DNA from: Scyliorhinus canicula | Taxonomy: Eukaryota | Direction of reading: 5' to 3' | NCBI RefSeq assembly: GCF_902713615.1 | Contig: NC_052163.1 | Location: 11,852,248 to 11,916,247, forward strand | DNA length: 64,000 bases | In this document: in pieces, positions 1-58,500 of the stretch | Numbering within the stretch: the stretch's first letter is position 1 | How the letters are laid out: every line of letters begins with the position of its first letter | Notes under the pieces: model-generated | The model's database searches: none | What the model was told of the DNA's origin: nothing | What the model saw: only the letters and a program-made list of their open reading frames with translations | Position numbers and translations under genes: made by a program

Positions 1-1659
1 ACAATTACATTCTGGACGGTGGGAGGAAAACAGACACTATGGAATGTTGCTGCTCCACTTTGCTCCTTCTGGGCTGTTTCACAGATATCTCCCATCCAGC
101 AAACAATGACGTTGTTTCAGCATTGGGAGGCGTGGCTCTGACTAATGCATGCAGTCCACATGACTGACAACACACCACTTTAACATTCCACCAACAATAC
201 TTTCAAACACAGCAACACTGTCTTGTTGCTTTACACTAATCGCAGATTTTAAAATGCTGGTGGGGGGTTGGAGAAGAGAGAGAGAGAATTATTTTTTATT
301 TGGAAATCTCACTTTAACCTGCCAATTTTAAAAGTCATGCTTCAGACATCCAAGATTTGAATGACTTTAAATCCTGGCAGAGCTTTTTAACTAGGCTCTT
401 CGCCAGAGGCCAAACGCCTTGCAATGGTACTTGGGCGAGGTATTTGAGTTATGAAACAGTTATACCAGAGCATTATAGGGTCAGGGTTTCAGAGCAACAG
501 GAGGACATCTCGCAGGCCACTGATCCATCCATTTTATTTGTCATGGCTATACTATTATTTTAATCTCCATATCTCACTGCTCTGCACAAACCTTAAAACT
601 CTTAGCTCTCTCAAGTGAACATCTACTCCATTTTTAGATACCTTAACTGATTGTGAATCCACCACCTCTTCAACCCACCACCTCTTCAACATGCTGAAAC
701 CTTCAATACCCTCCAACCCTCAATAGCTGCGAGGGGAATGTGCACGACCATTCAACATCTTTCCACAATGGGTTGCTGGCCAACTGAAGCAGGTGTCAGG
801 AATGGGTTGTGGTCCGGATGGGGAGGCAGTGAGATTGGGCTTTTGGAAAAATGTAGTCCAAATGGATTTCTTCATCCAGATTAACCTGGTCAATGTTTGG
901 CTCAGAGGCTTTCACCTCCTGACCTGGGTTAGGTCTGTTTCTCGCTGGGGGAATACAAGTCACGAGCAAGCGTTTTGACGTGATCACCAAACTAAGCAAA
1001 CTGCCTCAGGGAATATTAGTGACCAGTTTTCAAAGCACACAGGGGAAAGAGTTCAAGCAATGGAGACACGACAGTTAAAGCAATTTCAGAAGGAGCCTCA
1101 GCGGGTAAAAAATAAAATCCTAACCCTTTCCCCCGTGTAAATTAGAATCACTGAACAGATCTAACCTTCCAATGGTCAGAACACAACTCCTCACAAGTGG
1201 CTGGAAATACAAGAAAGCTGCTGAAATCAAAATGAGATCTTAACAGTAGATGCTGAGAGGTGGTCTCCCCCTGACTGGGCACTCTACAATGGGTTTATAA
1301 TCTCGGGATACGGGGAGTCTTCACTCAAGAGGTTTGTAAACCTTTGGAACTCACTACCCCAGTGCACGATCAGTCAATGAGTATATTCAAGCCCGAGATT
1401 GACAGACTATCAGAATCGTGGGATCGAGTGAGAAGGGAAGTGGAGATAGAAGCTTAACCATGATCTTCTATAACGGCAGAGCAAGCTTGATAGGCTGTCT
1501 GGCCTCCTCTCCTGTTTCTAGCGCCTACTTCACATCTGCTAATAACAAAATATATTCAAAGACTCCCTCAGCTAATTGACCGTCTCTTTTTAGCCCCCCA
1601 CCCCGGACAAATGCAGACAACACATAGTCCATCTCCACCTCTCTGCCCAAAACACCTAC

Positions 1660-1744
1660 TGGGCATCTCCCTGTCGAATCAGGTCACAGATCTGCAGGAT
1701 GGATTCCCAATCGGTTTCCAGAAGTAACTGGCTGGTTGCTTTGT
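1660..1744 (-). CDS. HGS: HGS coding exon 2 (85 nt)
   Basis: aaacag| (D)KATSQLLLETDWESILQICDLIRQGDAQ |gtaggt; phase consistent with exon 1. Confidence 0.95.
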
Positions 1745-3906
1745 CTGTTTGGGGAGAAGAAGAAAAACCTTAAACACACAAACAAGGATGAACTAAATGT
1801 TCCTAGCTCTACCACATGTAGACAGGCTTTCTCATGAGTATCTGTTAAAATAGATGAGGGGAACTCTATGAAGCAGTGGCAGCGAGATTCTTAGGCTCAG
1901 TAAGTGTTGTAGCATGGGTCAGTCACTCAACCAAAATTTGAGCTGAAAATGGCCATGGTTCTTATTTTCTGCAGGAGGATTATCCTTTCCTTCTGCCTGA
2001 TTACAATTACCATAGAACGGAAAACAATAGAGATAATGGACAAAGCATTAACCTCACCCCAATAAGCCAAACACCACAAATCACAATTTCAGGATCAGAG
2101 CTACAGGAGCAAAACAGTAGAACAAGAAAATAAACTTTCAAAAAAAAACCCCCAGCTCATTCACATTTATAAATATTAATTTGTAATATTTTAATTACGT
2201 TTCTTTCAAAATGTAATTCTTTAAAGTGCATAAATTTGACAATAGCAGTTGATTACTTTGCTAATTGAGTCTAGCCACTTAAAATCCCTCTAGTTCGTCA
2301 AACAAAGACACAATTTCTTCAATTCGCTGGTTACTATGTCTGAGAGAAGCCCGGTCAGATTTTGCTGCTCTCCCAGTCTAACTTACAGTCACAATAACCA
2401 ACCCAGACAGTACCTAACTGCCGCTAATTAAAGGGAGAGTGAACAGCAGGTTAATTCTTCCTCTGGCTGGAAGTACAAACACAGGTTCGAAATCTTCCCA
2501 AAACAAGTGATCATGTGGGGCAGACACAAGGGACAGAGTTTAGAACATACAGTGCAGAAGGAGGCCATTCGGCCCATCAAGGCTGCACCAAACCACTTAA
2601 GCCCTCACTTCCACCCTATCCCCGTAACCCAATAACCCCACCTAACATTTTTGGACACCAAGGGCAATTTAGCATGGCCAATCCCCCTATCCTTGTACAA
2701 AAGCAGAGGATGGACTGGATATCGCCAATGACAACTACACAGAAGACTAGTCTCTGAATGCATAAGCATAGGTAGATAGAAACAGGAGTGGGTTATTTAG
2801 CCTCTCTATTCTGTCCCACCAGCCAATGATCAGCAATCTGCTCCTAGTTCATTTATTTTACAGGTAATCTCAAAACACGGTCAGGACAGGTTGGCATCTT
2901 TGTTACCCAGACAATAAATCTCCTGTATAAAATGAGACAAATGCGGGCCGATTAATGCATGGGCCTATGGAGTTCATGGCCAGCGATCTAGCTCAATATG
3001 GACAGCATTTAAACCTGATCTATGGCGATAGGAATTTGCTTTGTTTTTTTTAAATTTTAGAGTACCCAATTCTTTTTCTTCCCAATTAAGGGGCAATTTA
3101 GCCTGGCCAATCCACCTACCCTGCACATCTTTGGGTTGTGGAGGCGAAACCCACACAAACACGGAGAGAATGTGCAAACTCCACATAGACAGTGACCCAG
3201 GGCCGGGATCGAACCTGGGACCTCGGCGCCGTGAGGCCGCAGTGCTAACCCACTGCGTCACTGCGCTGCCTGAATTTGCTTTGTTATTGACACAAACATG
3301 GAATAATTGATGTAAACATTCTAAGGTTCTATTTCTTCATGCACTTTCCGGCGCTCAATCTTCACACTGTGTCCAGAACTAAATAAACAGAGATGGCAGG
3401 ACAGGGGAAGGCCATTTGGGCTCTGGTTGGTGCCTGCTCCTCTGCTCAACACCATCATGCCGGATTCAAATACATCCATCGGTCCTTGGACCCCTTGTCC
3501 AGAAAAATCCATCCTGTTCATTGAGCTTTCTGCAGGGGGGGGGGGGGGGGTTCAGAGGGTCAGTACAGACTGGATGGGCAGAGTGGCCTCCTCCTACACT
3601 GCAGGGATTCTCTGATTCCCTGTTCTTGTTTCAGGGGTAGCTGGTTTCTGGAGATTCCTCCCCGGGGGCTGGGTAAGATTGACAGCCCAGCCAGCCGCCG
3701 GGCCCGGCTCACCCCCGCCGCCCAGGCTCCCGGGGCACCCCGGCCGCCCAGGCCCGGGGCCCCGCACCCGGCTCACCCCCGCCGCCCAGGCCTCGGGTTG
3801 TGAAATGGCGGCCGTCCGCTCCCTGCAGTAGTGGCGGCGGCGGCTCCCTCCCCGCCTTCTCTCTCTCACCGAGAAGCCTCTCGAAGGGGCCGCTGCCTTT
3901 GCCCAT
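1660..3906 (-). CDS. HGS: HGS (hepatocyte growth factor-regulated tyrosine kinase substrate, ESCRT-0), 5' part: complement(join(1660..1744,3870..3906)); gene continues left of the window
   Basis: Spliced translation MGKGSGPFERLL-DKATSQLLLETDWESILQICDLIRQGDAQ matches the VHS-domain N-terminus of vertebrate HGS; GT-AG sites; head-to-head with ARL16 as in human. Confidence 0.95.
3045..3270 (-). mobile_element. Short V-SINE subfamily (copies also ~7950-8176 -, 14182-14410 -, 33038-33255 +, 35345-35570 -, 47640-47785 -, 50190-50417 -, 51252-51470 +, 53819-54035 +, 56587-57077 -)
   Basis: Shared head GGCGCCGAGGTCCCAGGTTCGATCCCGG, GTGGAGTTTGCACATTCTCC, and tail AATTGCCCCTTAATTGG..AATTGGGTACTCTAAA. 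Confidence 0.88.
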
Positions 3907-4275
3907 CCTTCCGCCTCCCGCTGCTCCGTTCTCCAGCGACACCCTGCCGGCAGCTCCGCAGCCTCCTCACCCCTGCTGACACCCGGGGTCCTCCCGCGGG
4001 GGGCGGCGCTGCGTGGTGACGTCGGCGGGAGCCGCCTCCCAGCGCGGGCGCACTTGGGTGACGTCACAACCGAGCGAAGACCCGGGAGGCTCCACTGCGG
4101 GGGAAAAAAAGATAAAATAACGGGACTGGTATCGGGATTGGGCTGGGGCTGCCGGGAGATCAACATCAATAACCGCTGTTAATAGATCTCCTGGCGATGG
4201 AAGGACGCGTTCTGACAACGTCATAAGGCAGCGACACTGCCCCGTTGCCCAGCGACCGACTCCGGGCTCGGTTAA
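3660..4275. promoter_or_regulatory. CpG island / bidirectional HGS-ARL16 promoter
   Basis: Very GC- and CpG-rich; full CRE TGACGTCA at 4059-4066, near-CRE at ~4017, YY1-like AAATGGCGGC at 3803-3812, X-box-like GTTGCCCAGCGAC at 4244-4256. Confidence 0.8.
3870..3906 (-). CDS. HGS: HGS coding exon 1 (37 nt)
   Basis: ATG at 3906, MGKGSGPFERLL+G, donor GTGAGA at 3869; inside CpG island. Confidence 0.93.
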
Positions 4276-4276
4276 A

Positions 4277-5300
4277 GTTTCCAGGCCGGGTTGGGGTTTC
4301 CAGGCCGGGTTGGGGTTGGGGTATCCAGGCAGGGTTGGGGTTGGGGTTTCCAGGCCGGGTTGGGGTTTCCAGGCCGGGTTGGGGTTTCCAGGCCGGGTTG
4401 ACGTTTCCAGGCCGGGTTGGGGTTGGGGTTGGGGTATCCAGGCCGGGTTGGGGTTGGGGTTGGGGTATCCAGGCCGGGTTGGGGTTGGGGTTTCCAGGCC
4501 GGGTTGGGGTTGGGGTTGGGGTTGGGGTTTCCAGGCCGGGTTGGGGTTGGGGTTTCCAGGCCGGGTTGGGGTTTCCAGGCTGGGTTGGGGTTGGGGTTGG
4601 GGTATCCAGGCCGGGTTGGGGTTTCCAGGCCGGGTTGACGTTTCCAGGCCAGGTTGGGGTTGACGTTTCCAGGCCGGGTTGGGGTTGACGTATCCAGGCC
4701 GGGTTGGAGTTGACGTATCCAGGCCGGGTTGGGGTTGGGTTTTCCAGGCCGGGTTGGGGTTGACGTTTCCAGGCCGGGTTGGGGTTGACGTTTCCAGGCC
4801 GGGTTGGGGTTGACGTTTCCAAGCCGGGTTGGGGTTTCCAGGCCGGGTTGGGGTTGACGTTTCCAGGCCGGGTTGGGGTTGACGTTTTCAGGCCGGGTTG
4901 GGGTTGGGTTTTCCAGGCCGGGTTGGGGTTGACGTTTCCAGGCCGGGTTGGGGTTGACGTTTCCAGGCCGGGTTGGGTTTGACGTTTCCAGGCCGGGTTG
5001 GGGTTGGGTTTTCCAGGCCGGGTTGGGGTTGACGTTTCCAGGCCGGGTTGGGGTTGGGGTTGACGTATCCAGGCCGGGTTGGGGTTTCCAGGCCGGGCTG
5101 GGGTTGACATTTCCAGGCCGGGTTGGGTTTGACGTTTCCAGGCCGCGTTGGGGTTGACATTCCAGGCCGGGTTGGGGTTGACGTTTCCAGGCCGGGTTGG
5201 GGTTGGGTTTTCCAGGCCGGGTTGGGTTTGACGTTTCCAGGCCGCGTTGGGGTTGATGTATCCAGGCCGGGTTGGGTTTGACGTTTCCAGGCCGGGTGGG
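4277..5300 (+). repeat. G-rich minisatellite built from TTTCCAGGCCGGG / (GGGGTT)n / TGACG modules between the CpG island and the ARL16 ATG
   Basis: Direct inspection; about 19-37 bp variable units; produces the PTRPG/QPQPG repeat ORFs. Confidence 0.95.
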
Positions 5301-5398
5301 GATTTAACGGCCAGTGTTTCCTGTGCGACAATCGAGCAGCGACTTCTGACAACAATAATTATTAATTCTCCATCCCGCCGCCGATCAGCCCCGAGACA

Positions 5399-5459
5399 AT
5401 GTGTCTCCTGCTGGGAGTGACTGGAGTCGGCAAAACCCTGCTGCTGAAGAGACTGTACA
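5399..5459 (+). CDS. ARL16: ARL16 exon 1 (61 nt), ends at a U12 AT donor
   Basis: MCLLLGVTGVGKTLLLKRLY+A then |ATATCCTTC at 5460. Confidence 0.92.
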
Positions 5460-8400
5460 ATATCCTTCAAAATGTCCAAAATCCTTTAAACTGTACAACA
5501 TCCTTAAAACTGTACAACATCCTTAAAACTGTACAACATCCTTTAAACTGTACAATATCCTTTAAACTGTTCAGACTGTCCAATAACCTTTAAACTGTAC
5601 AATATCCTTTAAACTGTGCAGACTGTGTACAATATCCTTTACACTGTACAGACTGTCCAATATCCTTTAAACATTAAAGACTGTCCAATATCCCTTACAC
5701 TGTACAGACTGTCCAATACCCTTTAAACTGTACAGACTGTCCAATACCCTTTAAACTGTACAGACTGTCCAATATCCTTTAAACTGTACAAAATATCCAA
5801 TATCCTTTAAACTGTACAGCCTGTCCAATACCCTTTAAACTGTACAGAGTGTCCAATATCCTTTACACTGTACAGAGTGTCCAATACCCTTTAAACTGTA
5901 CAAACTGTCCAATATCTTTTAAACTGTACAGACTGTACAATATCCTTTAAACTGTACAGACTGTCCAATATCCTTTAAACTGTACAAAATATCCTTTAAA
6001 CTGTACAAAATATCCAATATCCTTTAAACTGTACATACTGTACAATATCCTTTAAACTGTACAGACTACAATATCCTTTACACTGTACAGACTGTCCAAT
6101 ACCCTTTACACTGTACAGTCTGTCCAATATCCTTTAAACTGTACAGACTGTCCAATATTCTTTAAACTGTACACAGTGCAATATCCTTTAAGCTGTACAG
6201 ACTGTCCAATATCCTTTACACTGTACAGACTGTCCAATATCCTTTAAACTGTACAGACTGTCCAATATCCTTTAAACTGTACAAAATATCCAATATCCTT
6301 TAAACTGTACAGCCTGTCCAATACCCTTTAAACTGTACAGAGTGTCCAATATCCTTTACACTGTACAGAGTGTCCAATACCCTTTAAACTGTACAAACTG
6401 TCCAATATCCTTTAAACTGTACAGACTGTACAATATCCTTTAAACTGTACAGACTGTCCAATATCCTTTAAACTGTACAAAATATCCAATATCCTTTAAA
6501 CTGTACAAAATATCCAATATCCTTTAAACTGTACATACTGTACAATATCCTTTAAACTGTACAGACTACAATATCCTTTACACTGTACAGACTGTCCAAT
6601 ACCCTTTACACTGTACAGTCTGTCCAATATCCTTTAAACTGTACAGACTGTCCAATATTCTTTAAACTGTACACAGTGCAATATCCTTTAAGCTGTACAG
6701 ACTGTCCAATATCCTTTACACTGTACAGACTGTCCAATATCCTTTAAACTGTACAGACTGTCCAATATCCTTTACACTGTACAGACTGTCCAATATCCTT
6801 TAAACTGTACAGACTGTCCAATATCCTTTACACTGTACAGAGTGTCCAATACCCTTTAAACTGTACAGACTGTACAATATCCTTTAAACCATAGAGACTC
6901 TCCAATATCCTTTACACTGTACAGTGTGTACAATATCTGTTGAACTGTACAGAGTATACAATATCCTTTAAACCATAGATACTATATAAGATCCTTTAAA
7001 CTACAGAGTCTACAATATCCTTTCACCTGTACAGACTGTCCAATATTCTTTAAACTGTACACAGTGCAATATCCTTTAAGCTGTACAGACTGTCCAATAT
7101 CCTTTACACTGTACAGACTGTCCAATATCCTTTAAACTGTACAGACTGTCCAATATCCTTTACACTGTACAGACTATCCAATATCCTTTAAACTGTACAG
7201 ACTGTCCAATATCCTTTACACTGTACAGAGTGTCCAATACCCTTTAAACTGTACAGACTGTACAATATCCTTTAAACCATAGAGACTCTCCAATATCCTT
7301 TACACTGTACAGTGTGTACAATATTTGTTGAACTGTACAGAGTATACAATATCCTTTAAACCATAGATACTATATAAGATCCTTTAAACTACAGAGTCTA
7401 CAATATCCTTTCACCTGTACAGACTGTACGATATCCTTTAAACTATAGAGACTACAATATTATTTAAACTATACAGGCTGTACAATATCCGTTAACCATA
7501 CAGACTGTACAGTATCCTTTAAATATCATTTTAAATAACATTCAGTCTGTGATTTTAAATAGCTTTCAGTCTGACTGATTTTAAGTAGTATTCTGTCCTA
7601 TGGTAATTTTCAACAGCATTCATTCTGACTGTAATTTAAAATCGCATTTGATCTGATTGTTTTTAAATAGGATTCCGCTTGACTGATTTTAAATAATATT
7701 CAGAATCAGTCTGTTATTTTAAATATCCCTCAGCCTGGGTGTGATTTTAAATTGCATTCAGTCTGATTTTGATTTGAAATAACATTCATTCTGACTGTGA
7801 TTGGAAATAGCATTCAGTCTGACTGTGATTGGAAATAGTATTCAGTCTGACTGTGATTGGAAATAGTATTCAGTCTGACTGTGATTGGAAATAGCATTAA
7901 TTCGGCATGAGACTTTAAATACTATTCAATCTGAATGAGATTTTTTTTTTCTTTTTTTTAAAATTTAGATTAGCCAATTATTTTTTCCAATTAAGGGGCA
8001 ATTTAGCGTGGCCAATCCACCTACTCTGCACATTTTTGGGTTGTGGGGGCGAAACCCACACAGACATGGGGAGAACGTGCAAACTCCACACGGACAGTGA
8101 CCCAGAGCCGGGATCGAACCTGGGACCTCAGCGCCGTGAGGCGGCTGTGCTAACCACTAGGCCACCGTGCTGCCCTCCTGAATGAGATTTTAAATAGCAT
8201 TCAGTCTGGGGGAGATTTTACAAAACTATTAAGTATTTGTGTGCCATTTTTTTGCAACCTCGGGGTTTTCCAAAGTGCTTTAGTCAATGAAGTACTCATG
8301 AAGTATTGTCACTGTTCCAAGCGGAGTGTGATTATAAACTTTACACAAACTATTATTTGCCATGCAAATTGTGTGATTTTAAATACCAGACCACTTGAAA

Positions 8401-11400
8401 CGTGGTATTTTAGAGTGCATGCTATAATTGATGTAATCTATTTGTGTTACTGTGCTGTTACATGTGACTGCGATGAAAGTAATACACGACTCTCTGTTAC
8501 AACAGCTTTCTGCACTTAATATGATTTAATTCTTTTAAAACTGGAACCTTTTTTAGAATTTCGATTGCAGCCCTGGCATTGACTAAGTCAGCACAAACTA
8601 GAGATTGAGCCTGGGGCCTTCCGGACTCAGCTATTTACAGGAGAAATCTGCTGGATTGTAGGAGGCACTTACATCTGCTTCATAAATATGACCCAAAAGT
8701 GTTGGACTATTGCTGCTAAATTGTTCAGTCGATTATTATAGCGCTATAATAAAATGTAAAGTAGCATTTAAGTAACAGCGCACAAAGCAATACCTATAGC
8801 ACCTTTTACATTCCCAGGTTGTCCCAAAGCACCCCACAGCCAATGAGATAAAGTGTATTCACTGTCGTGATGTAGCAAACCAGGCAGCTAATTTATGCAA
8901 AGCAGGATCCCACAGACGGAAACACTGCAATGACCTGATGGTCTGTTGTTGTGATGTTGATTCGGGACACTGCGGATAATTCCACTCTCCTACAAAATAG
9001 CGCAATGGAATCTTTTACAATCAACTGGCGGAGGAGGCGGGGTCTTGTTTACCATCTCTGAAAGATGAGGAAGGAACATTGTCGCTTCTTCCAATAGTTA
9101 AAAATGATGGGTGGCATTCATGTGTCTTAGTGCTTGTCTAATGGTGCAACCATTGGAGGGCTGTGAGGATGTCACTTGCCTGAGACGATGGATGATGGGA
9201 AACTAAAGAGGAGAACTATACTGGAGGAATAAAATCATCAGTGTCGATAAAAATCCACAAAAAGGGAAGACTTGCATTTATATAATGCCTTTCACAACCT
9301 CAGAACTTGTTAAAGTGCTTCACAGGCAATGAAGTAGCTTTGAAGTGTAGTCACTGATGTAAGATAACCAACTTGTCTGCAGCAAAGACTTAAAATCCGA
9401 ATCAGATAGTCTGTTGTAGACTTTGGTTGAGGTACAGACATTGGCCAGGTAGTTCCACTGCTGTTCTTTGAAATAGTACAGTGGGATCTTTCACCCTCAG
9501 CTGAGAGAGAAGACGAGAGCTTGGAGGTTTCATGTTTCATCCAAAAGACGGCACCTCCGACAGTGCAGAGGTCCCTCAGTACAGCACTGGGTACAGCAGT
9601 GGTGTGTCAGCTGAGGGTCCTGTGTTCACTAGTGACTAGTGCCCACAGCCCCCGTAAAGGTGGTACAAGCGACACCAGCTTCATGTGAAGGAGCAGTCAC
9701 TTTCAACTTTGAATATTTAAACACGTCACAGATTGTGAGATGTGAATTTATCCAATTTTAGGCAGACATTCCATATTTTTAAATCCTTGACTGGGATGCA
9801 CAGATGAGTTCGAAAGAAAGCACTGGTGAACTAGGAGAGCCTCCACCCACACTTCCCACGGTACATTCACACTGGCTATCAAATGTGTTCAATAGAAGAC
9901 TCGGGTGGGATTTTCCAGCCCCGCCGATGTCTTCGCCATTTTGTGTGGCTTGACGGCCCCCCACCCCTCTGCCGGCGAGGGGGGGTGGGGATGGGGGGAA
10001 TGGGGGTGTCCCCTTCAGTGGGACTAGAATATCTTGCTGGTGGGAAGGATCGGAAAATCCCGTCCTTTTAGTTAAGGTCTGCTATCCTGGATTTGTTACA
10101 TTTTTTAGAAATATCCATTTAAAAACACTGGATTCAGACGGCAGCATCATGCTTCAATATGTATTATGAGTGGTAATCCTTAGAATGTCCTAAGCGAGGT
10201 GATGGATAACACACATTTTCACCTTGAATCAATCGCAATCTGTCACCGCTTTATCAGCCGTTGCGATTTATGGTGTTTAATTCCCCATTAACCTCTCCTC
10301 ATAAGTTGGCTTCAGCCTCTTCGTCTTTTTAAGGAACTGGCACAGGCTGCTTGAACACAGTGGTTGCTTCAGCTGAATACCATTGTCTTTCACACTGATT
10401 GCTTGACCATCCCCATAGTGTCAGGAGCAGAGAGCAGGCCACCTCAGTACAATTAACATCAATACATTCCAAACACCTTGTTTTAAATTGGGAGAACGTA
10501 GGCAAAAGGGCCGAGGACCATTGGAAAAGCCCCTCGCATTGTTAAACTGCAGCAAAATGCAGAGTGTGGTAAATGAAGACAGGGTGATGAGATGATGCCA
10601 TACCTGTGCTCTCTGAGCTGGCAGCAGAGGTGGGCTGGTACTTGAAGAGCTTGACAATTCGGGAAGGATTGAGTTCCGATGAGAATCTGCAATGAGTCAC
10701 TTGAGAATGTAAATGGCTCAGAGAACATTATAGCGCATATTATAACAGAAATGTTATAGCGCAGAAGGAGGCCATTTGGCCCCTCAGGTCCATTCTAGCT
10801 CTCCAAACGTGCATGCTGACTTAGTGACAATCCCCTGCCTTTTCCCCGTACCCTGCACATCGCTTTTATTCAAATAATCATCTAATGTCCTCTTGAATGC
10901 CTCGATTGAACTTGCCTCCACCACACTTCCAGGCTCGATTCACTCGCTGTGCGAAAAGGTTTTCCTCACATAACATTTGCTTCTTTTGCAAATCACTTTA
11001 AATCTGTGTCCTCTCCTTCTCGATCCTTTTCCGAGCGGGAACAGTTTCTCCCCGTCTACTCTGTCAGCCCCCTCATGATCTTGAACGCCTCTATCAAATC
11101 TCCTCTCACCCCTCTTCTCTCCAAGGAGAATTTAACATTCAATCAACCGCCAGAGTTATTTACAGCGCTGAAGGAGAGCATTTGGCCCATCACGTTCATG
11201 CTGCCCAGCCTCGAGCAGGCCAGTCAGCCCTGGCCCCAGCTCCACCCCTTTGCAGCTTTACCCCCCTCAAGTGACCATCCACTTTCCTTTTGAATTAATT
11301 CATGCCACCACCCGAGCAGGCAGCGTGTTCCAGGTCCCTGTGGAAAAATAGTTCTAGTCAACACCATTTCAAACTTCTTTACCCAGACTGTGAAACTTGT

Positions 11401-36100: not shown

Positions 36101-39100
36101 GAAAGCAAGGAATAAAAGCACCCACAGTTAAAAAAAAAGAAGAAAACACTTTCTCCTAAACTAGGGTTGCCAATTCTGCTTTGACATATTCCTGGAGAAT
36201 GTTTGGAGAGACACATGATCACATGACACATGAATTTGTTCATCGTTTACAAATGTTATTGCGTTTGTTTTAGCAAGTCCTTTAATATTCCTGGGCTCGG
36301 ACTAAAATTTTGACTTAATCTTAATTCAATTGCTCTCAAATCCCACAACGGAATTCCGGGGGATGAATTGCTCGAATCCTGGGGCAGGACACACATTACA
36401 AAGCGAGTTCCAATGATCACAGATCTGTAATGTTGATTGTTTTTCGCTCTCTCTCTCTCTATAGATACTGCCATACCTGCCGAGTACCTCTAGCATTTTC
36501 TGTTTTTTGTTTGTTATGTGCAGAAAATACGGAGGCTGGGGATTGAGGGTGATTTAGAGATGTGGATCAGAAATTGGCTAGTTGAAAGAAGACAGAGAGT
36601 GGTAGTTGATGGAAATGTTCAGAATGGAGTTCAGTTACGAGTGGCGTACCACAAGGATCTGTTCTGGGGCCGTTGCTGTTTGTCATTTTTATAAATGACC
36701 TAGAGGAGGGCGCAGAAGGATGGGTGAGTAAATTTGCAGACGACACTAAAGTCGGTGGAGTTGTAGACAGTGCGGAAGGATATTGCAGGTTACAGAGGGA
36801 CATAGATAAGCTGCAGAGCTGGGCTGAGAGGTGGCAAATGGAGTTTAATGTGGAGAAGTGTGAAGTGATTCACTTTGGAAAGAATAACAGGAATGCGGAA
36901 TATTTGGCTAATGGTAAAATTCTTGGTAGTGTGGATGAGCAGAGGGATCTCGGTGTCCATGTACATAGATCCCTGAAAGTTGCCACCCAGGTTGATAGGG
37001 TTGTGAAGAAGGCCTATGGTGTGTTGGCCTTTATTGGTAGAGGGATTGAGTTCCGGAGCCATGAGGTCATGTTGCAGTTGTACAAAACTCTAGTACGGCC
37101 GCATTTGGAGTATTGCGTACAGTTCTGGTCGCCTCATTATAGGAAGGACGTGGAAGCCTTGGAACGGGTGCAGAGGAGATTTACCAGGATGTTGCCTGGT
37201 ATGGAGGGAAAATCTTATGAGGAAAGGCTGATGGACTCGAGGTTGTTTTCGTTAGAGAGAAGAAGGTTAAGAGGTGACTTAATAGAGGCATACAAAATGA
37301 TAAGAGGGTTAGATAGGGTGGACAGCGAGAGCCTTCTCCCGCGGATGGAGGTGGCTAGCACGAGGGGACATAGCCTTAAATTGAGGGGTAATAGATATAG
37401 GACAGAGGTCAGAGGTGGGTTTTTTACGCAAAGAGTGGTGAGGCCGTGGAATGCCCTACCTGCAACAGTAGTGAACTCGCCAACATTGAGGGCATTTAAA
37501 AGTTTATTGGATAAGCATATGGATGATAAGGGCATAGTGTAGGTTAGATGGCCTTTAGTTTTTTTCCAGGTCGGTGCAACATCGAGGGCCGAAGGGCCTG
37601 TACTGCGCTGTATCGTTCTATGTTCTATACCGCAATGAGAAGCAGTCTCTCCTTCTCCCCATCGTTCAAATTTGTCTTCCCCTCAGTAATTGACATGCAC
37701 AAATCAGGAATGTTTCTTTCAAATCATCAAATATCGCTCGAGGGATCAGTCATTCTGGGAGACACTGGATAAGGAATCTCACAAAACCCAAGGTTTACAC
37801 ACTTGCACCACGTGTGTACAAGTACTGAAATGCCCAACAGTATCCAACCCATTTATTTCAAATGCAAAATGCAACTAGCCAACCTGCGATTGCTCAGTTC
37901 GTGACCAGAGCGCTGGTCAGACCCTGGCAGAAAAGTGGGCTTCATTCTGGAGTAGCTGCTGCTAAGCCAGACGTCCCGACTGCCGGCGAATGGGGAGCTG
38001 CCCCCTCCCCCAACACGGGCAGAGTGACTGGCGTGTGAATGGGGAGCTGCCCCCCCCACGGGCAGAGTGACTGGCGTGTGAATGGGGAGCTGCTCCCCTC
38101 CCGCCCCCTCACAAGGGCAGAGTGACTGGCAGCGAATGGAGAGCTGCCCCCCCCCCCCACCCCCCACAGGCAGAGTGAGTGGCGTGTGAATGGGGAGCTG
38201 CCCCTACAGGCAGAGTGACTGGCGGCGAATGGGGAGCTGCCCCCTCCCCCAACACGGGCAGAGTGACTGGCGTGTGAATGGGGAGCTGCCCCCTCCCCCA
38301 ACACGGGCAGAGTGACTGGCGTGTGAATGGAGAGCTGCCCCCCCCCCCCCCAACGCGGGCAGAGTGACTGGCGTGTGAATGGGGAGCTGCCCCCCCACGG
38401 GCAGAGTGACTGGCGTGTGAATGGGGAGCTGCCCCCCCCACGGGCAGAGTGAGTGGCGTGTGAATGGAGAGCTGCCCCCCCCCCCCCCAACGCGGGCAGA
38501 GTGACTGGCGTGTGAATGGAGAGCTGCCCCCCCACGGGCAGAGTGAGTGGCGTGTGAATGGAGAGCTGCTCCCCCACGGGCAGAGTGACTGGCGGAGAAT
38601 GGAGAGCTGCCCCCCCCACCCAACACGGGCAGAGTGACTGGCGTGTGAATGGAGAGCTGCCCCCCCCCCCAACGTGGGCAGAGTGACTGGCGTGTGAATG
38701 GAGAGCTGCTCCCCCACGGGCAGAGTGACATGGCGGAGAATGGAGAGCTGCAGAGCTGCCCCCCCCCCCCACAGGCAGAGTGACTGGCGTGTGAATGGAG
38801 AGCTGCCCCCCACAGGCAGAGTGACTGGCGTGTGAATGGAGAGCTGCTCCCCTCCCACCCCCCCCCCCCCCCCCCCCCCACCCCACAGGCAGAGTGACTG
38901 GCGGCGAATGGAGAGCTGCCCCCCCCCCACCCCCACAGGCAGAGTGACTGGCGGCGAATGGAGAGCTGCCCCCCCCCCCAACCCCCCCCACCCCCACAGG
39001 CAGAGTGAGTGGCGTGTGAATGGAGAGCTGCCCCCCCCCACGGGCAGAGTGACTGGCGGTGAATGGCGAGCTGCCCCCCCCCCCCCCAGGCAGAGTGACT

Positions 39101-42100
39101 GGCGGTGAATGGAGAGCTGCCCCCCCACGGGCAGAGTGACTAGCGGAGAATGGAGAGCTGCCCCCCCCCCCCCACGGGCAGAGTGACTGGCGTGTGAATT
39201 GAGAGCTGCCCCCCCCCACGGGCAGAGTGACTGGCGTGTGAATGGAGAGCTGCCCCCACCCCCCCCCACGGGCAGAGTGACTGGCGTGTGAATGGAGAGC
39301 TGCCCCCCCCCCACGGGCAGAGTGACTAACGGAGAATGGAGAGCTGCCCCCCCCCCCCACGGGCAGAGTGACTGGCGTGTGAATGGAGAGCTGCCCCCCC
39401 CCCCCCCCCCCACGGGCAGAGTGACTGGCGTGTGAATGGAGAGCTGCCCCCCCCCCCCCCCCCCCACGGGCAGAGTGACTAGCGGTGAATGGAGAGCTGC
39501 CCCCCCCCCCCCCCACACAGGCAGAGTAAGTGGCGTGTGAATGGAGAGCTGCCCCCCCACGGGCAGAGTGACTGGCGTGTGAATGGGGAGCTGCCCCCCC
39601 CACGGGCAGAGTGACTGGCGTGTGAATGGCGAGCTGCCCCCCCCCCCCCCCCCCACGGGCAGAGTGACTAGCGGTGAATGGAGAGCTGCCCCCCCCCCCC
39701 CCCCCCCCACACAGGCAGAGTAAGTGGCGTGTGAATGGAGAGCTGCCCCCCACGGCAGAGTGACTGGCGTGTGAATGGGAGCTGCCCCCCCACGGGCAGA
39801 GTGACTGGCGTGTGAATGGCGAGCTGCCCCCCCCACGGGCAGAGTGACTGGCGTGTGAATGGAGAGCTGCCCCCCCCCCCCCCCCCCCCACGGGCAGAGT
39901 GACTGGCGGAGAATGGAGAGCTGCCCCAACACGGGCAGAGTGAGTGGCGTGTGAATGGCGAGCTGCCCCCCCCCACGGGCAGAGTGACTGGCGGAGATGG
40001 AGAGCTGCCCCCCCACGGGCAGAGTGACTGGCGTGTGAATGGGGAGCTGCCCCCCCCACGGGCAGAGTGAGTGGCGTGTGAATGGAGAGCTGCCCCCCCC
40101 CCCCCACGGGCAGAGTGACTGGCGGAGAATGGAGAGCTGCCCCCCCCCACGGGCAGAGTGACTGGCGTGTGAATGGAGAGCTGCCCCCCCACGGGCAGAG
40201 TGACTGGCGGAGAATGGAGAGCTGCCCCCCCCCCCACGGGCAGAGTGACTGGCGTGTGAATGGAGAGCTGCCCCCCCCCCCCACGGGCAGAGTGACTGGC
40301 GTGTGAATTGAGAGCTGCCCCCCCCCACGGGCAGAGTGACTGGCGTGTGAATGGAGAGCTGCCCCCACCCCCCCCCACGGGCAGAGTGACTGGCGTGTGA
40401 ATGGAGAGCTGCCCCCCCCCCCACGGGCAGAGTGACTAACGGAGAATGGAGAGCTGCCCCCCCCCCCCACGGGCAGAGTGACTGGCGTGTGAAGGGAGAG
40501 CTGCCCCCCCCCCCCCCCCACGGGCAGAGTGACTAGCGGTGAATGGAGAGCTGCCCCCCCCCCCACACAGGCAGAGTAAGTGGCGTGTGAATGGAGAGCT
40601 GCCCCCCCACGGGCAGAGTGACTGGCGTGTGAATGGGGAGCTGCCCCCCCCACGGGCAGAGTGACTGGCGTGTGAATGGCGAGCTGCCCCCCCCACGGGC
40701 AGAGTGACTGGCGTGTGAATGGAGAGCTGCCCCCCCCCCCCACGGGCAGAGTGACTGGCGGAGAATGGAGAGCTGCCCCCAACACGGGCAGAGTGAGTGG
40801 CGTGTGAATGGCGAGCTGCCCCCCCCACGGGCAGAGTGACTGGCGGAGAATGGAGAGCTGCCCCCCCCACGGGCAGAGTGACTGGCGTGTGAATGGGGAG
40901 CTGCCCCCCCCACGGGCAGAGTGAGTGGCGTGTGAATGGAGAGCTGCCCCCCCCCCCACGGGCAGAGTGACTGGCGGAGAATGGAGAGCTGCCCCCCCCC
41001 ACGGGCAGAGTGACTGGCGTGTGAATGGAGAGCTGCCCCCCCACGGGCAGAGTGACTGGCGGAGAATGGAGAGCTGCCCCCCCCCCCCACGGGCAGAGTG
41101 ACTGGCGTGTGAATGGAGAGCTGCCCCCCCCCCCCCCCCCCCCCACGGGCAGAGTGGTGAAACCAGCCCCAGATTTAGATCAAATGCCACCACATCCATT
41201 GAGAAGATGCAACCCTTCAAACTCGTTGGACACGTTAATGTCTCTGATCAGAAATGACAGCTCCCATTGTGGTAAGAGTGGGATGCAATGATTCACAAAC
41301 CTGTCCCGGTAAAGCGGACGATGTTCGAACACACCCTGTTCAGGAACGGCTGGTGGCCGGATTGTTCCGGAAGCTGGTTCTTCATCATTTTCAGCAGCAC
41401 AAGCAGGAAGAGACAGACCAGGCCTAGCACGAGGTCACCGATCCTGCAGCAAGGTGGAGGGCAAAGTAAAGCAATACATGGAAACTGAAACAGAAGGGCC
41501 ACCCAGCCCATCAAGGCTGTGCTAGCTCAAAACCCGTTTTCCTTCTATTCCATTATCACCTAATTTCCTCTTAAAAAGACAAAGATTGACTTGCGCTGTG
41601 GTAACATGCTCCATTTTATCAACTGAAAATAATTCTTCAACCTCCTGCTTAGCGTTTATGGTATTGTTACCGACTTAATTCGACCCCAGTTCCCCAGCAA
41701 CTGTTGGTGATTTACCACCAACCCCCCCCCCCCCCCCCCCCCAACATTGTAGTCAGTTTACCGGCACAAAGAGGCCTTTCAGCCCATCGTGTCTGGGCTA
41801 GCCATCGAGCACCCATTTTCCAGTACTTGGTCCTTGTATGCCATGCCGTTGAGATCGAAATGCTTCCCAAATGTTTCAGGTTCCCACCTCTACCAGCGAG
41901 TTCCAGGTTCCCACCTCCCTCTGGGTGAAAACATTTTTTCTTCAAATCCTCTGCCCCTCACTTTAATCTATGCCCCCTGGTTATTGACCCCTCTACTAAA
42001 GGGGCCCCTGCATAGTTTGTCAGTAAGCCCCTGCCGGCTAGCTCCGCCCACAGGGAGCAGTATAAATATCCATGAGGTCTCCCGAGCTGCCATTTTACAG

Positions 42101-55531: not shown

Positions 55532-58500
55532 GTGAGTGGACCATTCCTATTTTCCTCCTTCCACCCCCCTCCCCATGGTCTTCTCCAATGATTACAATGC
55601 CTTTACAGCATAGTAACAGGCCATTCGGCCCAACTGCTCCATGTTGGTCCATTCCAACCTACTCACACCTCACCCTATCAGATTCACCTTCGATACCCTT
55701 GTCCCTCGTGTTGATCTGTCTTCCCCACAAGCACATCTGGCCCTGGAATTGCCAACGTGCCGGTCCTGCTCCTGGGCTCCAGCACCAGAATCCAGGCTAA
55801 CTTTGCAGAGTCCTGATGTGGAGATGCCAGCGTTGGACTGGGGTGGGCAGAGTAAGAAGCCTTACTAACACCAGGTTAAAGTCCAACAGCTTTGTTTCGA
55901 ATCACTAGCTTTTGGAGCGCTGCTCCTCAGAGGAAGGAGCTGCGCTCCGAAGGCTAGTGATTCGAAACAAACCTGTTGGACTTTAACCTGGTGTTGTAAG
56001 ATTTCTGGAGTCCAACAGAAGAGTTAGGAGCAGAGTAGGCAATTCAGACCCTTTGAGCCTCCTCCGCCATTCAATCAGATCACGGCTGATCATGTGCTGG
56101 TTTCAAATCCACCTACCTATCTGTTCCCCATATCCCTTTAACCCATGGGGGTGCTGTGCTACCAAGGGTGGTATGGGGGAGGGGGCAGGGGTAGTGGAGG
56201 GGGGCAGTGCTGCCAGGGGGGGTTGTTCAATGTGATTGGCGAGCGTAGTTTAGATTGTACTCACTGACAATGATTTGCTTTTCAATAATCTCTCCATTGT
56301 GTGTGCTGTGACAGCTGATGACGCTGGCTTTGAGACTGAGGTGTATAACAACACTGCCATCAGGACCCCGAACCTCAACCAATTGGCAAAACGCAGCGTC
56401 ATCTTCCGAAATGCCTTCTCGTCCGTCAGCAGCTGCTCGCCCAGTCGTTCTGCCATTTTAACAGGCCTGCCACAGGTACGGACACTGACCCTCCGCCATT
56501 TTAACTGGCCTGTCACAGGTACGGACACTGACCCTCCGCCATTTTAACTGGCCTGTCGCAGGTACGGACACTGACCCTCCGCCATTTAAAAAAATTTAGA
56601 GTACCCAATTATTTTTTCCCAGTTAAGGGGCAATCTAGCGTGGCCAATCCATCTAACCTGCACATCTTTGGGTTGTGGGGGTGAGACCCACGCAGACACG
56701 GGGAGAACGAGCAAACTCCATTTTGTGAGGGGCACGAAGAATCCAGCCCGAGTTTTCAGGATACAAAGAAAAAAACATTTATTTACAATAACATATATAC
56801 AGCAGCAACAACTTCCCTTGCTGCTCACTCCTCTCTCTCTGCTGGTTCCAAACTGGCCAGCTCTATTTATGCAGGGAGTCTGCTAATGATTTCTCTGCCC
56901 CCCTCATTGGGGAAGCTCATACTCCCACAGGATTGTGGGATTGTCATTAGTCTCCAGCCAATGGTAAGCAGGCAGGTTGTAACACTCCACACGGACAGTG
57001 ACCCGGGGCTGGGATTGAACCCGGGTCCTCGGCGCCGTGTGGCAGCAGTGCTAACCACTGCGTCACCGTACCGCCCCACCCTCCACCATTTTAACTGGCC
57101 TCCCAGTGGTATGTTCGCTGACTAAATGTTAACCTCCGGCTCCAGTCACTGCTGTGTTTAGCGGATCACCACAGCCCTGAAAGTTGGGTCAAAGCTTTTG
57201 CTGGTTGTCTACAAGGAGGGCGTCCAGTTCCCGTCGCTCACTTAACGAATGCTTTAAGCAGGTTCTAGCAGTATTTACGTCACCCGCACCGGGGACATAC
57301 ATCTGAGACTTGGAGCCCTCCGTTCACAAACAGCCCGGGTCCAGTGGGCCCTTTTTCTGAGTGAGGCAGTTGGGGTTTTGGGGATGTGAAGTAAAGCTGG
57401 CTCGATGGAGTTGAGGTGACGATCGAGCAAGGTTGATGCAAGAGGCTGGCTGGGCAGCTCTGAGGGGCTGAATGGCCTCCACCTTGATGGCAGTTTTGTG
57501 CTCGGTGAGATGTTGTGATTGATGTTGTGACCCCGGGGAGGAAAGAATCAGCCTTGTGTCCTCTTCCCCCCCCCCCCCCCCCCAGAGGACGCAGGCCACC
57601 CTGTGTAGAGACCCCCTCCGTGGCCACATTTATTTATAATATTGATTTTTGAAGCCTCCATTTCAAGGTGCGCTCGCCCGCCCCTTCCTACCCTACCTCT
57701 GCTCACTCCCCTTCTGGGAAAAACTGTGCCAGTGTGCAGTAGTCGGGCTCCGTCAAGGACCCAAGAAGAAATGCTGGAAAATCTCAGCAGGTCTGGCAGC
57801 ATCTGCAGGGAGAGAAAAGAGCTAACGTTTCAAGTCCAGGTGACTCTTTGTCAAAGCTAACATCAAGGACCTGGAAATAGCGCTTGCCCGGGTTTAGAAA
57901 CAAAGCAATAAGATTGGGGACCGAGTGGAGCTCAGTACCTGACAAGACAGTCTGTGCGGGTTACATGTAGCGTTAACTGAAATGGAGAGAGGTTTTGAGG
58001 ATGCGAGGGTGATTGATTGGCTGGGTTTGTGATTGCAGCATCAGAATGGGATGTATGGACTGCATCAGGCTGTTCACCATTTCAATTCCTTCGACACTGT
58101 CAGAAGTTTGCCATTTCTGCTCAGACAGTCACAGATCAGGACAGGTAAGGGTTTGGACATTGGCACAGAGACTCCATTTCTAAAATGCTTTCAACTTTCA
58201 CTCTGTTTAAAATGTTACCTGAATCCCACTTCTTTCACAGCGAATAACATACTCCCACGCCGCGTCTTGCCCTGCCTGTGACACGTTACTGCACCATGTG
58301 TTACCCTGCGTGTGACATGCTACTGCACCATGTTACCTTGCACGCGACACACTCCTGCCCCGTGTGTTAGCCTGCGTGACATGCTCCTGCCTGCGTGTGG
58401 CATACCCCTGCCCTTGCCCCATGTGTTGCCCTGTATGTAGAATGCCCCTGCCCGCTGTTTGCCTGGCGTGTGGCACGTCCGTTTCCCGTGTATTATTAGG

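What the first reader, a model, noticed from the sequence alone, without database searches (positions are those of the whole stretch)
5450..7522. About 50 tandem copies of the minor-spliceosome (U12) 5' splice site directly behind the real AT-AC donor of ARL16
Seen: the 2-kb array is an amplification of the exon1/intron1 junction (AGACTGTACA|ATATCCTT). About 50 units (manual count) carry RTATCCTTT, a better match to the U12 donor consensus than the authentic site (ATATCCTTC). Each unit's TCCTTTAAAC/TCCTTTACAC also loosely resembles the U12 branch consensus (TCCTTRAC) and is followed within ~10 nt by AC dinucleotides. The first perfect decoy (5555) would shift the frame, and all later ones lie past the in-frame TAA at 5591-5593, so decoy use is unproductive. 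Established: tandem U12-type 5'ss motifs (the USSE of SNRNP48 and RNPC3) bind U11 snRNP without being spliced and control mRNA fate; minor snRNPs are scarce and rate-limiting. Inference: this could be a giant USSE-like element, a U11/U12 landing pad or sponge, an NMD-coupled rheostat tying ARL16 output to minor-spliceosome level, or a substrate for stepwise minor splicing. It could also be a tolerated neutral expansion.
Basis: partly seen in the sequence, partly recalled or inferred. Interest (0 to 1): 0.85.

Follow-up and report, generated by a model that had tools for sequence, protein, structure and literature searches.

The report
Minor-spliceosome donor copied into intron minisatellite
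In the catshark ARL16 gene, the last bases of exon 1 plus its rare AT-AC (U12-type) splice donor have been copied about 72 times into the intron, leaving 50 perfect spare donors, yet RNA reads show only the first, true donor in use, so this looks like a tolerated repeat expansion rather than a regulator.

Summary
A 19/28-bp minisatellite at 5452-7523 (about 72 units) is built from the last 8 nt of ARL16 exon 1 plus the first 11 nt of its AT-AC intron. RTATCCTTT occurs exactly 50 times, all on the + strand inside the array, against 0.75 expected.

The intron (5460-9801) has full U12 signals. In three oligo-dT RNA-seq runs, all 11 partly laid reads join exon 1 at the true donor to exon 2. No read ended at a decoy and none showed a joint inside the array. 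Array depth is about 5% of exon 1 depth.

New mutations hit the donor motif as often as the rest of the unit (1.56 against 1.58 distinct variants per position). Much of the copy number comes from two very recent block duplications (98.4% and 99.5% identical).

The 64-kb window holds about 11 minisatellites. Two others also amplify an exon end plus an ordinary GT donor, both in SGSH. Earlier notes of this scan report the same architecture at other U2-type donors of this genome (LAMTOR1, FPGT and others), but none at a U12 donor.

Best reading: a tolerated exon-boundary minisatellite like the human F7 intron 7 VNTR, here for the first time at a minor-spliceosome donor. A USSE-like or U11-sponge role is unsupported but not excluded, because nonsense-mediated decay (NMD) could hide decoy products.

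The parts
5399..5459 (+). ARL16 exon 1 (ATG to the last exon base; 61 nt, phase 1)
   Evidence: Translation gives MCLLLGVTGVGKTLLLKRLY. RNA reads cover it and continue into exon 2.
5460..5468 (+). Authentic U12-type AT donor, ATATCCTTC
   Evidence: Sequence. All 11 partly laid reads of three RNA runs leave the stretch here and continue as exon 2.
5452..5570 (+). Proximal, older 19-bp units. The first unit is the true junction. The next four have position +2 of the donor mutated (AAATCC once, ACATCC three times).
   Evidence: TRF period 19; unit list; 76% identity to the consensus over 5452-5650.
5591..5593 (+). First in-frame stop (TAA) if exon 1 is read on into the intron
   Evidence: Translation.
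5547..7523 (+). Main 28-bp minisatellite, about 72 copies, consensus ACTGTCCAATATCCTTTAAACTGTACAG. It holds 50 RTATCCTTT motifs.
5764..6756 (+). Recent block duplication: 5764-6256 and 6257-6756 are 98.4% identical
6647..7422 (+). Second recent block duplication: 6647-7034 and 7035-7422 are 99.5% identical (386 of 388)
7539..7943 (+). Adjacent, unrelated 28/84-bp minisatellite in the same intron
   Evidence: TRF. No unit homology to the donor array beyond shuffles: 40% of shuffles score as well.
9784..9791 (+). U12 branch-site motif TCCTTGAC, with its branch A 11 nt before the intron end
   Evidence: Sequence.
9800..9801 (+). Terminal AC of the AT-AC intron (intron 5460-9801, 4342 nt)
   Evidence: Sequence; junction confirmed by RNA loose ends.
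9802..9860 (+). ARL16 exon 2 (59 nt), followed by a GT donor
   Evidence: The overhang of the loose ends matches it.
11707..16228 (+). ARL16 exons 3-5 (11707-11823, 15384-15499, 16051-16228 including the stop), all with GT-AG introns
   Evidence: The protein aligns end to end with shark ARL16.

Best explanation
This is an exon-boundary minisatellite (VNTR). A short tandem duplication spanning the ARL16 exon 1 / intron 1 junction (8 nt of exon plus 11 nt of intron, 19 bp) arose in a genome region that makes minisatellites very readily. The unit grew to 28 bp by a 9-bp internal duplication. The array then expanded by unequal exchange, most recently through two block duplications of about 0.5 and 0.4 kb. 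Because the seed contained a U12-type AT donor, the intron now carries 50 consensus minor-spliceosome donors.

The gene tolerates them because the spliceosome uses the first donor, the one behind the real, cap-proximal, purine-rich exon. This matches the human F7 intron 7 VNTR, where the downstream pseudo-donors are functional but silent. Any decoy use would add a frameshift or a premature stop, so its products would be removed by NMD.

Shown: the anatomy, the block duplications, exclusive detection of the authentic junction, and parallel arrays at GT donors. Inferred: the birth mechanism, the first-donor rule for U11/U12, and NMD of decoy products.
For: - Structure and motif count.
- RNA: loose ends occur only at 5460 and continue as exon 2, with 3+3+5 reads. 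These are all the partly laid reads of the three runs, so no read ended at a decoy. There are no joints. Array depth is about 5% of exon 1 depth, on the sense strand. A spliced contig has depth 35 in a fourth run.
- Mutation pattern: 14 distinct variants over 9 motif positions against 30 over the 19 other positions (1.56 against 1.58 per position, binomial p = 1.0). Singletons are 0.78 against 0.47 per position.
- Recent dynamics: blocks 98.4% and 99.5% identical, with more diverged edges (76-83%) and a homogenised centre (92-96%).
- Context: about 11 arrays cover roughly 18% of the window. Two more arrays amplify an exon end plus a GT donor in SGSH: 56452-56587 (43 bp x 3.2) and 58899-62202 (26 bp x 125). 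Earlier scan notes list more in this genome.
- Precedent: F7 IVS7 (PMC1557585).
- The array RNA has no strong fold that would hide the decoys (z = -2.0, motifs unpaired).
Against: - In copy-weighted terms the donor 9-mer is the best-kept 9-nt window of the unit. It is intact 49 times, against 24-43 for windows outside it, and carries 4.1 non-consensus copies per position against 9.8 for the rest. Selection on the motif could produce this. So could the chance amplification of about six old variants and the internal ACTGTNCA duplication.
- Only 11 junction reads were available, and NMD would deplete decoy products. Moderate decoy use at synthesis is therefore not excluded.
- Runs of another species (organism C) hold 6-7% of the array's 31-mers, so the array or its unit may be older than the species.
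- Three of about 11 arrays in one window start at a donor junction. That is more than random placement predicts, so 'purely neutral and random' may be incomplete.
Confidence: 0.72

Rival explanations
1. Giant USSE-like element or U11/U12 landing pad or sponge. The 50 consensus donors bind U11 (or the U11/U12 di-snRNP) without being spliced. They hold the pre-mRNA in the nucleus or titrate minor snRNPs, tying ARL16 output (or minor splicing in general) to U11 level.
For: - There are 50 perfect U12 donor motifs in tandem.
- USSE shows that tandem U12 donors can bind U11 without being spliced and can cause nuclear retention (PMC5473595).
- In copy-weighted terms the donor motif is the best-kept part of the unit.
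- An unspliced exon 1-intron contig is present at depth 14 against 35 for the spliced form in run X1.
Against: - The same architecture arises at ordinary GT donors in this window and elsewhere in this genome, so no U12-specific reason is needed.
- Distinct mutations are uniform over the unit, and a donor-killing variant (ATACCC) has spread to 10 or more units.
- Copy number nearly doubled by very recent block duplications.
- USSE works by activating an upstream U2-type 3' splice site. No such joint was seen.
- ARL16 is not a minor-spliceosome component, so there would be no feedback logic.
- snRNP abundance as a limiting factor is disputed.
Confidence: 0.1
2. NMD-coupled rheostat or stepwise minor splicing. 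A share of transcripts uses decoy donors, or splices within the array, and yields products with premature stops that are degraded. This lowers ARL16 output.
For: - The decoys match the consensus at least as well as the true site, and they share its -8 to -1 context.
- Every decoy product would be frameshifted or carry the TAA at 5591, so steady-state RNA under-reports them.
- About 15 sense reads lie inside the array.
Against: - None of the 11 junction-type reads comes from a decoy. No joints or loose ends occur inside the array in three runs.
- The array depth of about 5% is within what plain intron retention of a slowly spliced minor intron would give.
- In the F7 precedent, functional pseudo-donors do not compete with the first site.
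Confidence: 0.12
3. Assembly artefact: the array or its length is an error of the assembler.
For: Short-read contigs cannot span 2 kb of repeat, so the copy number rests on the assembly alone.
Against: - Array words are held by DNA runs of two samples, by four runs of unclassified library type (study P6), and by contigs of run X1 (labelled 'RNA?'). Those contigs match with 0-2 differences, including one across the exon 1-array boundary.
- The degenerate edges and block structure are typical of real arrays.
Confidence: 0.03

Closest known systems
Human F7 intron 7 VNTR (37-bp minisatellite whose first unit spans the exon 7 / intron 7 boundary; Borensztajn et al. 2006, PMC1557585)
   Same: The first repeat unit is the real exon-intron junction. 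Downstream units carry donor copies identical to or better than the real one. Only the most upstream donor is used.
   Different: F7 has a handful of U2-type GT donors read by U1. Here there are about 72 units with 50 consensus U12-type AT donors read by U11/U12, which recognise the donor and the branch site cooperatively. Whether an 'oriented scanning' rule holds for the minor spliceosome has not been shown.
[quoted passage not shown]
   Same: Tandem U12-type 5' splice-site motifs that are not themselves spliced.
   Different: USSE has two copies, is ultraconserved, and sits in genes for U11/U12 proteins. It acts by activating an upstream U2-type 3' splice site in a feedback loop. The array here has 50 copies, is evolving quickly, and sits directly behind the true donor of an unrelated gene. 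It shows no activated 3' splice site.
Other splice-donor minisatellites of the catshark genome (SGSH in this window; LAMTOR1, FPGT, PDCD11, TAF5L in earlier scan notes)
   Same: The same build: exon end plus donor, copied in tandem into the intron, from 3 to about 270 copies.
   Different: All of those are GT (U2-type) donors. This is the only one at a minor-spliceosome AT-AC donor.

Membership tests
U12-type (AT-AC) intron | 5' splice site /ATATCCTT | tested here: met
   ATATCCTTC at 5460.
U12-type (AT-AC) intron | Branch motif TCCTTRAC about 10-15 nt upstream of the 3' end, with terminal AC | tested here: met
   TCCTTGAC at 9784-9791. The branch A at 9790 lies 11 nt before the last intron base; AC is at 9800-9801.
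U12-type (AT-AC) intron | The junction is used in RNA | tested here: met
   11 reads in three runs and one contig join 5459/5460 to exon 2.
U12-type (AT-AC) intron | The orthologous gene is a known minor-intron gene | tested here: met
   Human ARL16 is listed among minor-intron genes with retention on ZCRB1 loss (PMC13216214). Which human intron is the minor one was not checked.
Exon-boundary (splice-donor) minisatellite, F7 IVS7 type | The first unit spans the exon-intron boundary | tested here: met
   The unit is 8 nt of exon tail plus the intron start, and the first unit is the true junction.
Exon-boundary (splice-donor) minisatellite, F7 IVS7 type | Downstream units carry intact donor copies | tested here: met
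   50 RTATCCTTT motifs.
Exon-boundary (splice-donor) minisatellite, F7 IVS7 type | Only the most upstream donor is used | tested here: met
   11 of 11 junction reads, and none at decoys. The depth is low and NMD was not blocked.
Exon-boundary (splice-donor) minisatellite, F7 IVS7 type | Copy number varies between individuals (VNTR) | tested here: inconclusive
   Word shares differ between samples (0.59 against 0.41) but do not measure length.
USSE | Tandem U12-type 5' splice-site motifs | tested here: met
USSE | Located in SNRNP48 or RNPC3 as part of a feedback loop on the minor spliceosome | tested here: not met
   The host gene is ARL16.
USSE | Activates an upstream U2-type 3' splice site (alternative exon or long 3'UTR) | tested here: not met
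   No joints in or into the array. The array follows exon 1 directly.
USSE | Deep evolutionary conservation | not testable with these tools
Within the array, 98.4-99.5% identical blocks and uniform mutation argue for fast turnover.
USSE | U11 snRNP binding | not testable with these tools
   Needs CLIP or pull-down.

The most novel reading that the evidence does not exclude
Splice-donor junctions are hot spots for minisatellite birth in the catshark genome. Three of about 11 arrays in this one 64-kb window start with an exon end plus its donor: ARL16 (U12 type) and two in SGSH (U2 type). Under random placement, with at most about 40 donors and a 50-bp tolerance, I estimate this at roughly P = 0.005. 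If real, some process tied to 5' splice-site recognition on nascent RNA (for example R-loops or breaks at the donor) seeds tandem duplications, whichever spliceosome reads the site. The ARL16 array would then also be a ready-made natural test of how U11/U12 choose among 50 identical donors.
Probability: 0.2. Interest if true: 0.75.

Novelty: new variant of a known kind. Interest (0 to 1): 0.5.

Why it matters
U12-type donors carry so much sequence information that sequence alone is often assumed to define them. Here an expressed, correctly spliced gene carries 50 consensus copies downstream of the true site. Position and exon context, not motif quality, must therefore decide minor-spliceosome donor choice in this intron.

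That makes an open question testable: does the first-donor rule shown for U1 in F7 also hold for U11/U12? Minigenes with 0, 5 or 50 units would answer it.

The case also belongs to a recurrent and unexplained class of donor-junction minisatellites in the catshark genome. It shows that the class does not depend on which spliceosome reads the site.

No paper in the searched library combined 'U12-type' with 'VNTR'.

Tried and rejected
Exon 2 could therefore be seen only as the overhang of loose ends, not as a joint.
- The ARL16 loci of basking shark and bamboo shark were found, but no DNA was served because the files are too large. Intron 1 could not be compared across chondrichthyans. Only the CDS spans are known: 7.1 kb and 10.6 kb, against 10.8 kb here.
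- The full catshark protein could not be passed to the search tools without typing it. I used exon pieces by reference, plus an alignment.
- Rfam found nothing in 1-20000.
- The neighbouring 28-bp array (7539-7943) is not a decayed part of the donor array.
- RNA structure masking the decoys is rejected. The fold is weak and the motifs stay unpaired.
- Purifying selection on the motif is not shown. The event-based test is flat, and the copy-weighted excess rests on about six amplified variants, only one of them in the motif.
- Literature searches for a U12 donor VNTR or decoy array found none.

Full report
**Observation**

- Tandem Repeats Finder gives a 19-bp array at 5452-5570 (6.3 copies) that runs into a 28-bp array at 5547-7523 (71.7 copies, 84% matches).
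- RTATCCTTT occurs exactly 50 times in the 64-kb window. All hits are on the + strand between 5555 and 7520, against 0.75 expected and at most 4 in shuffles.
- A 22-nt unit probe with up to 3 mismatches hits 69 times, and every hit is inside the array.
- Unit by unit, the repeat is ACTGT(A/C)CA + ATATCCTTT + AA(ACTGTACAG). That is the last 8 nt of exon 1, then the start of the intron, then in the 28-bp form a 9-bp partial re-duplication.
- The first unit is the true junction, so the array is an amplification of the exon 1 / intron 1 boundary.

**Gene and intron**

- The ATG is at 5399 and exon 1 ends at 5459.
- The intron starts ATATCCTTC at 5460. It carries TCCTTGAC at 9784-9791, with the branch A 11 nt before the terminal AC at 9800-9801. 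Exon 2 is 9802-9860.
- With exons 3-5 (11707-11823, 15384-15499, 16051-16228, all GT-AG) the product is 176 aa. It is 90% identical to Cetorhinus ARL16 and 81-82% identical to the two orectolobiform ARL16 proteins.
- Human ARL16 is treated as a minor-intron gene in PMC13216214.
- Reading exon 1 on into the intron meets TAA at 5591-5593. The first perfect decoy (5555) changes the phase.

**Which donor is used**

One call of read laying was lost to a filter at 8048-8103. The second covered 5300-8040 in three oligo-dT RNA-seq runs and one contig run.
- In each raw run, the only loose ends are at 5460, and the overhang reads as exon 2. There are 3, 3 and 5 such reads.
- These numbers equal the total of 'only partly laid' reads in each run, so no read ended at any decoy.
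- No joints were found inside the array.
- Depth is 2.3-5.1 over exon 1 and the 5'UTR, and mostly 0 in the array. About 15 sense-strand reads lie over 2 kb, roughly 5% of exon 1 density.
- In run X1, a spliced contig (depth 35) and an unspliced exon 1-intron contig (depth 14) coexist.
- At steady state the authentic donor is therefore the only one detected.
- Limits: there are only 11 junction reads, and decoy products would be NMD targets. Moderate decoy use at synthesis is not excluded.

**Is the motif protected?**

I aligned the whole array to the 28-mer consensus with a wrap-around alignment, so that no motif-based anchoring biased the result.
- Counted as events, the mutations are uniform. 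There are 14 distinct substitution variants over the 9 motif positions and 30 over the other 19 (1.56 against 1.58 per position, binomial p = 1.0). Singletons are, if anything, commoner in the motif (0.78 against 0.47 per position).
- Counted by copies, the motif is better kept. It has 4.1 non-consensus copies per position against 9.8. The donor 9-mer is intact 49 times, against 24-43 for windows away from it.
- The copy-weighted difference rests on about six variants that were amplified to 8-23 copies, only one of which (T to C at +4, ATACCC, 10 copies) lies in the motif. My binomial estimate for one or fewer of six is about 0.38. The variable positions also lie in the ACTGTNCA segment, which occurs twice per unit.
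- The test is therefore inconclusive and leans neutral.
- The four copies nearest the true donor all have position +2 mutated (AAATCC once, ACATCC three times). This could reflect selection against close competitors, but it amounts to only two mutational events.

**Dynamics**

- Block 5764-6256 is 98.4% identical to 6257-6756. Block 6647-7034 is 99.5% identical to 7035-7422 (386 of 388).
- The edges of the array are more diverged (76-83% to the consensus) than the centre (92-96%). This is ordinary minisatellite behaviour.
- A large part of the '50' is very young.
- Array 31-mers are held by DNA runs of two samples of the species. Runs of another, coded species hold 6-7% of them, so some form of the array or its unit may predate the species.

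**Context**

- The window holds about 11 arrays, roughly 18% of its length. Among them are a G-rich 25-bp array that ends 98 nt before the ARL16 ATG, and kilobase arrays at 38007-41132 and 58899-62202.
- Two of these repeat the same build at ordinary GT donors of SGSH.
  - At 56452-56587, the end of the exon that carries the sulfatase CSPSR motif (Pfam Sulfatase, E = 4e-10) plus GTACGG is present 3.2 times.
- At 58899-62202, CACCGGAGACAG|GTATAAC is present about 125 times, directly behind an open exon.
- Earlier notes of this scan name the genome as the small-spotted catshark. They list further donor arrays in LAMTOR1, FPGT, PDCD11, TAF5L and others, all U2-type. Apart from the SGSH cases, these are leads I did not test.
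- The architecture is therefore generic in this genome and not tied to the minor spliceosome.

**Explanation**

The best-supported reading is a tolerated exon-boundary minisatellite.
- The known precedent is the human F7 intron 7 VNTR. Its first unit spans the exon boundary, and its downstream pseudo-donors are functional yet never compete with the first site (PMC1557585).
- By analogy, U11/U12 engage the first donor that emerges behind the real, cap-proximal exon, which ends in a purine-rich GAAGAGA stretch. This step is inferred.
- The array RNA has no fold that would hide the decoys.

The USSE comparison fails on its defining features. USSE has two copies, is deeply conserved, sits in SNRNP48 and RNPC3, and works by activating an upstream U2-type 3' splice site. 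None of this is seen here. The claim that minor snRNPs are limiting is itself disputed in the review.

**Novelty and score**

- I found no paper that combines U12-type introns with a VNTR or a decoy array.
- This is a new variant of a known kind: the first donor-junction minisatellite at an AT-AC donor.
- It is a useful natural substrate for asking how the minor spliceosome chooses among identical donors.
- It adds to an apparent excess of donor-seeded arrays in this genome: three of about 11 in this window, which my rough estimate puts at about 0.005 under random placement.
- Interest is 0.5.

Noticed in passing
window 58899-62202: A 26-bp unit repeated about 125 times (CACCGGAGACAG|GTATAACCTCCCAA). 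It sits directly behind an open SGSH exon that ends ...[10 protein letters not shown], and is a U2-type splice-donor minisatellite of 3.3 kb.
   Followed up: partly
window 56452-56587: A 43-bp unit repeated 3.2 times. It consists of the last 24 nt of the SGSH exon with the sulfatase CSPSR motif plus 19 nt of intron (CACAG|GTACGG). It looks like a young donor-junction duplication, possibly the starting state of the large arrays.
   Followed up: partly
window 4277-5301: A G-rich 25-bp minisatellite (GGGTTGGGGTTGACGTTTCCAGGCC, about 41 copies) ends 98 nt before the ARL16 ATG. RNA reads run over position 5300, so the 5'UTR or promoter abuts or enters the array. In other sharks HGS lies head to head about 200 bp from ARL16.
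   Followed up: no
window 9821: The window has A (codon ACT, Thr), but the loose-end consensus of all three raw RNA runs has G (GCT, Ala). This may be a polymorphism or A-to-I editing. No DNA from the same animals was checked.
   Followed up: no
window 5377 and 5395: G>A differences in the ARL16 5'UTR appear in some RNA runs and in the X1 contig. They are probably SNPs.
   Followed up: no
window 38007-41132: A 43-bp unit repeated about 68 times, containing a long C run followed by ACGGGCAG|AGTG. This looks like an acceptor. Open reading continues after the last unit (41132 onward), so it may be an acceptor-junction array.
   Followed up: no
window 8000-8180: A tRNA-derived SINE-like element sits inside ARL16 intron 1.
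   Followed up: no
window 5547-7523 (every unit): Each 28-bp unit contains the perfect 8-nt palindrome CTGTACAG, and the exon tail itself holds TGTACA. This may favour slippage or hairpins at the DNA level. As RNA it gives only weak pairing between units.
   Followed up: partly
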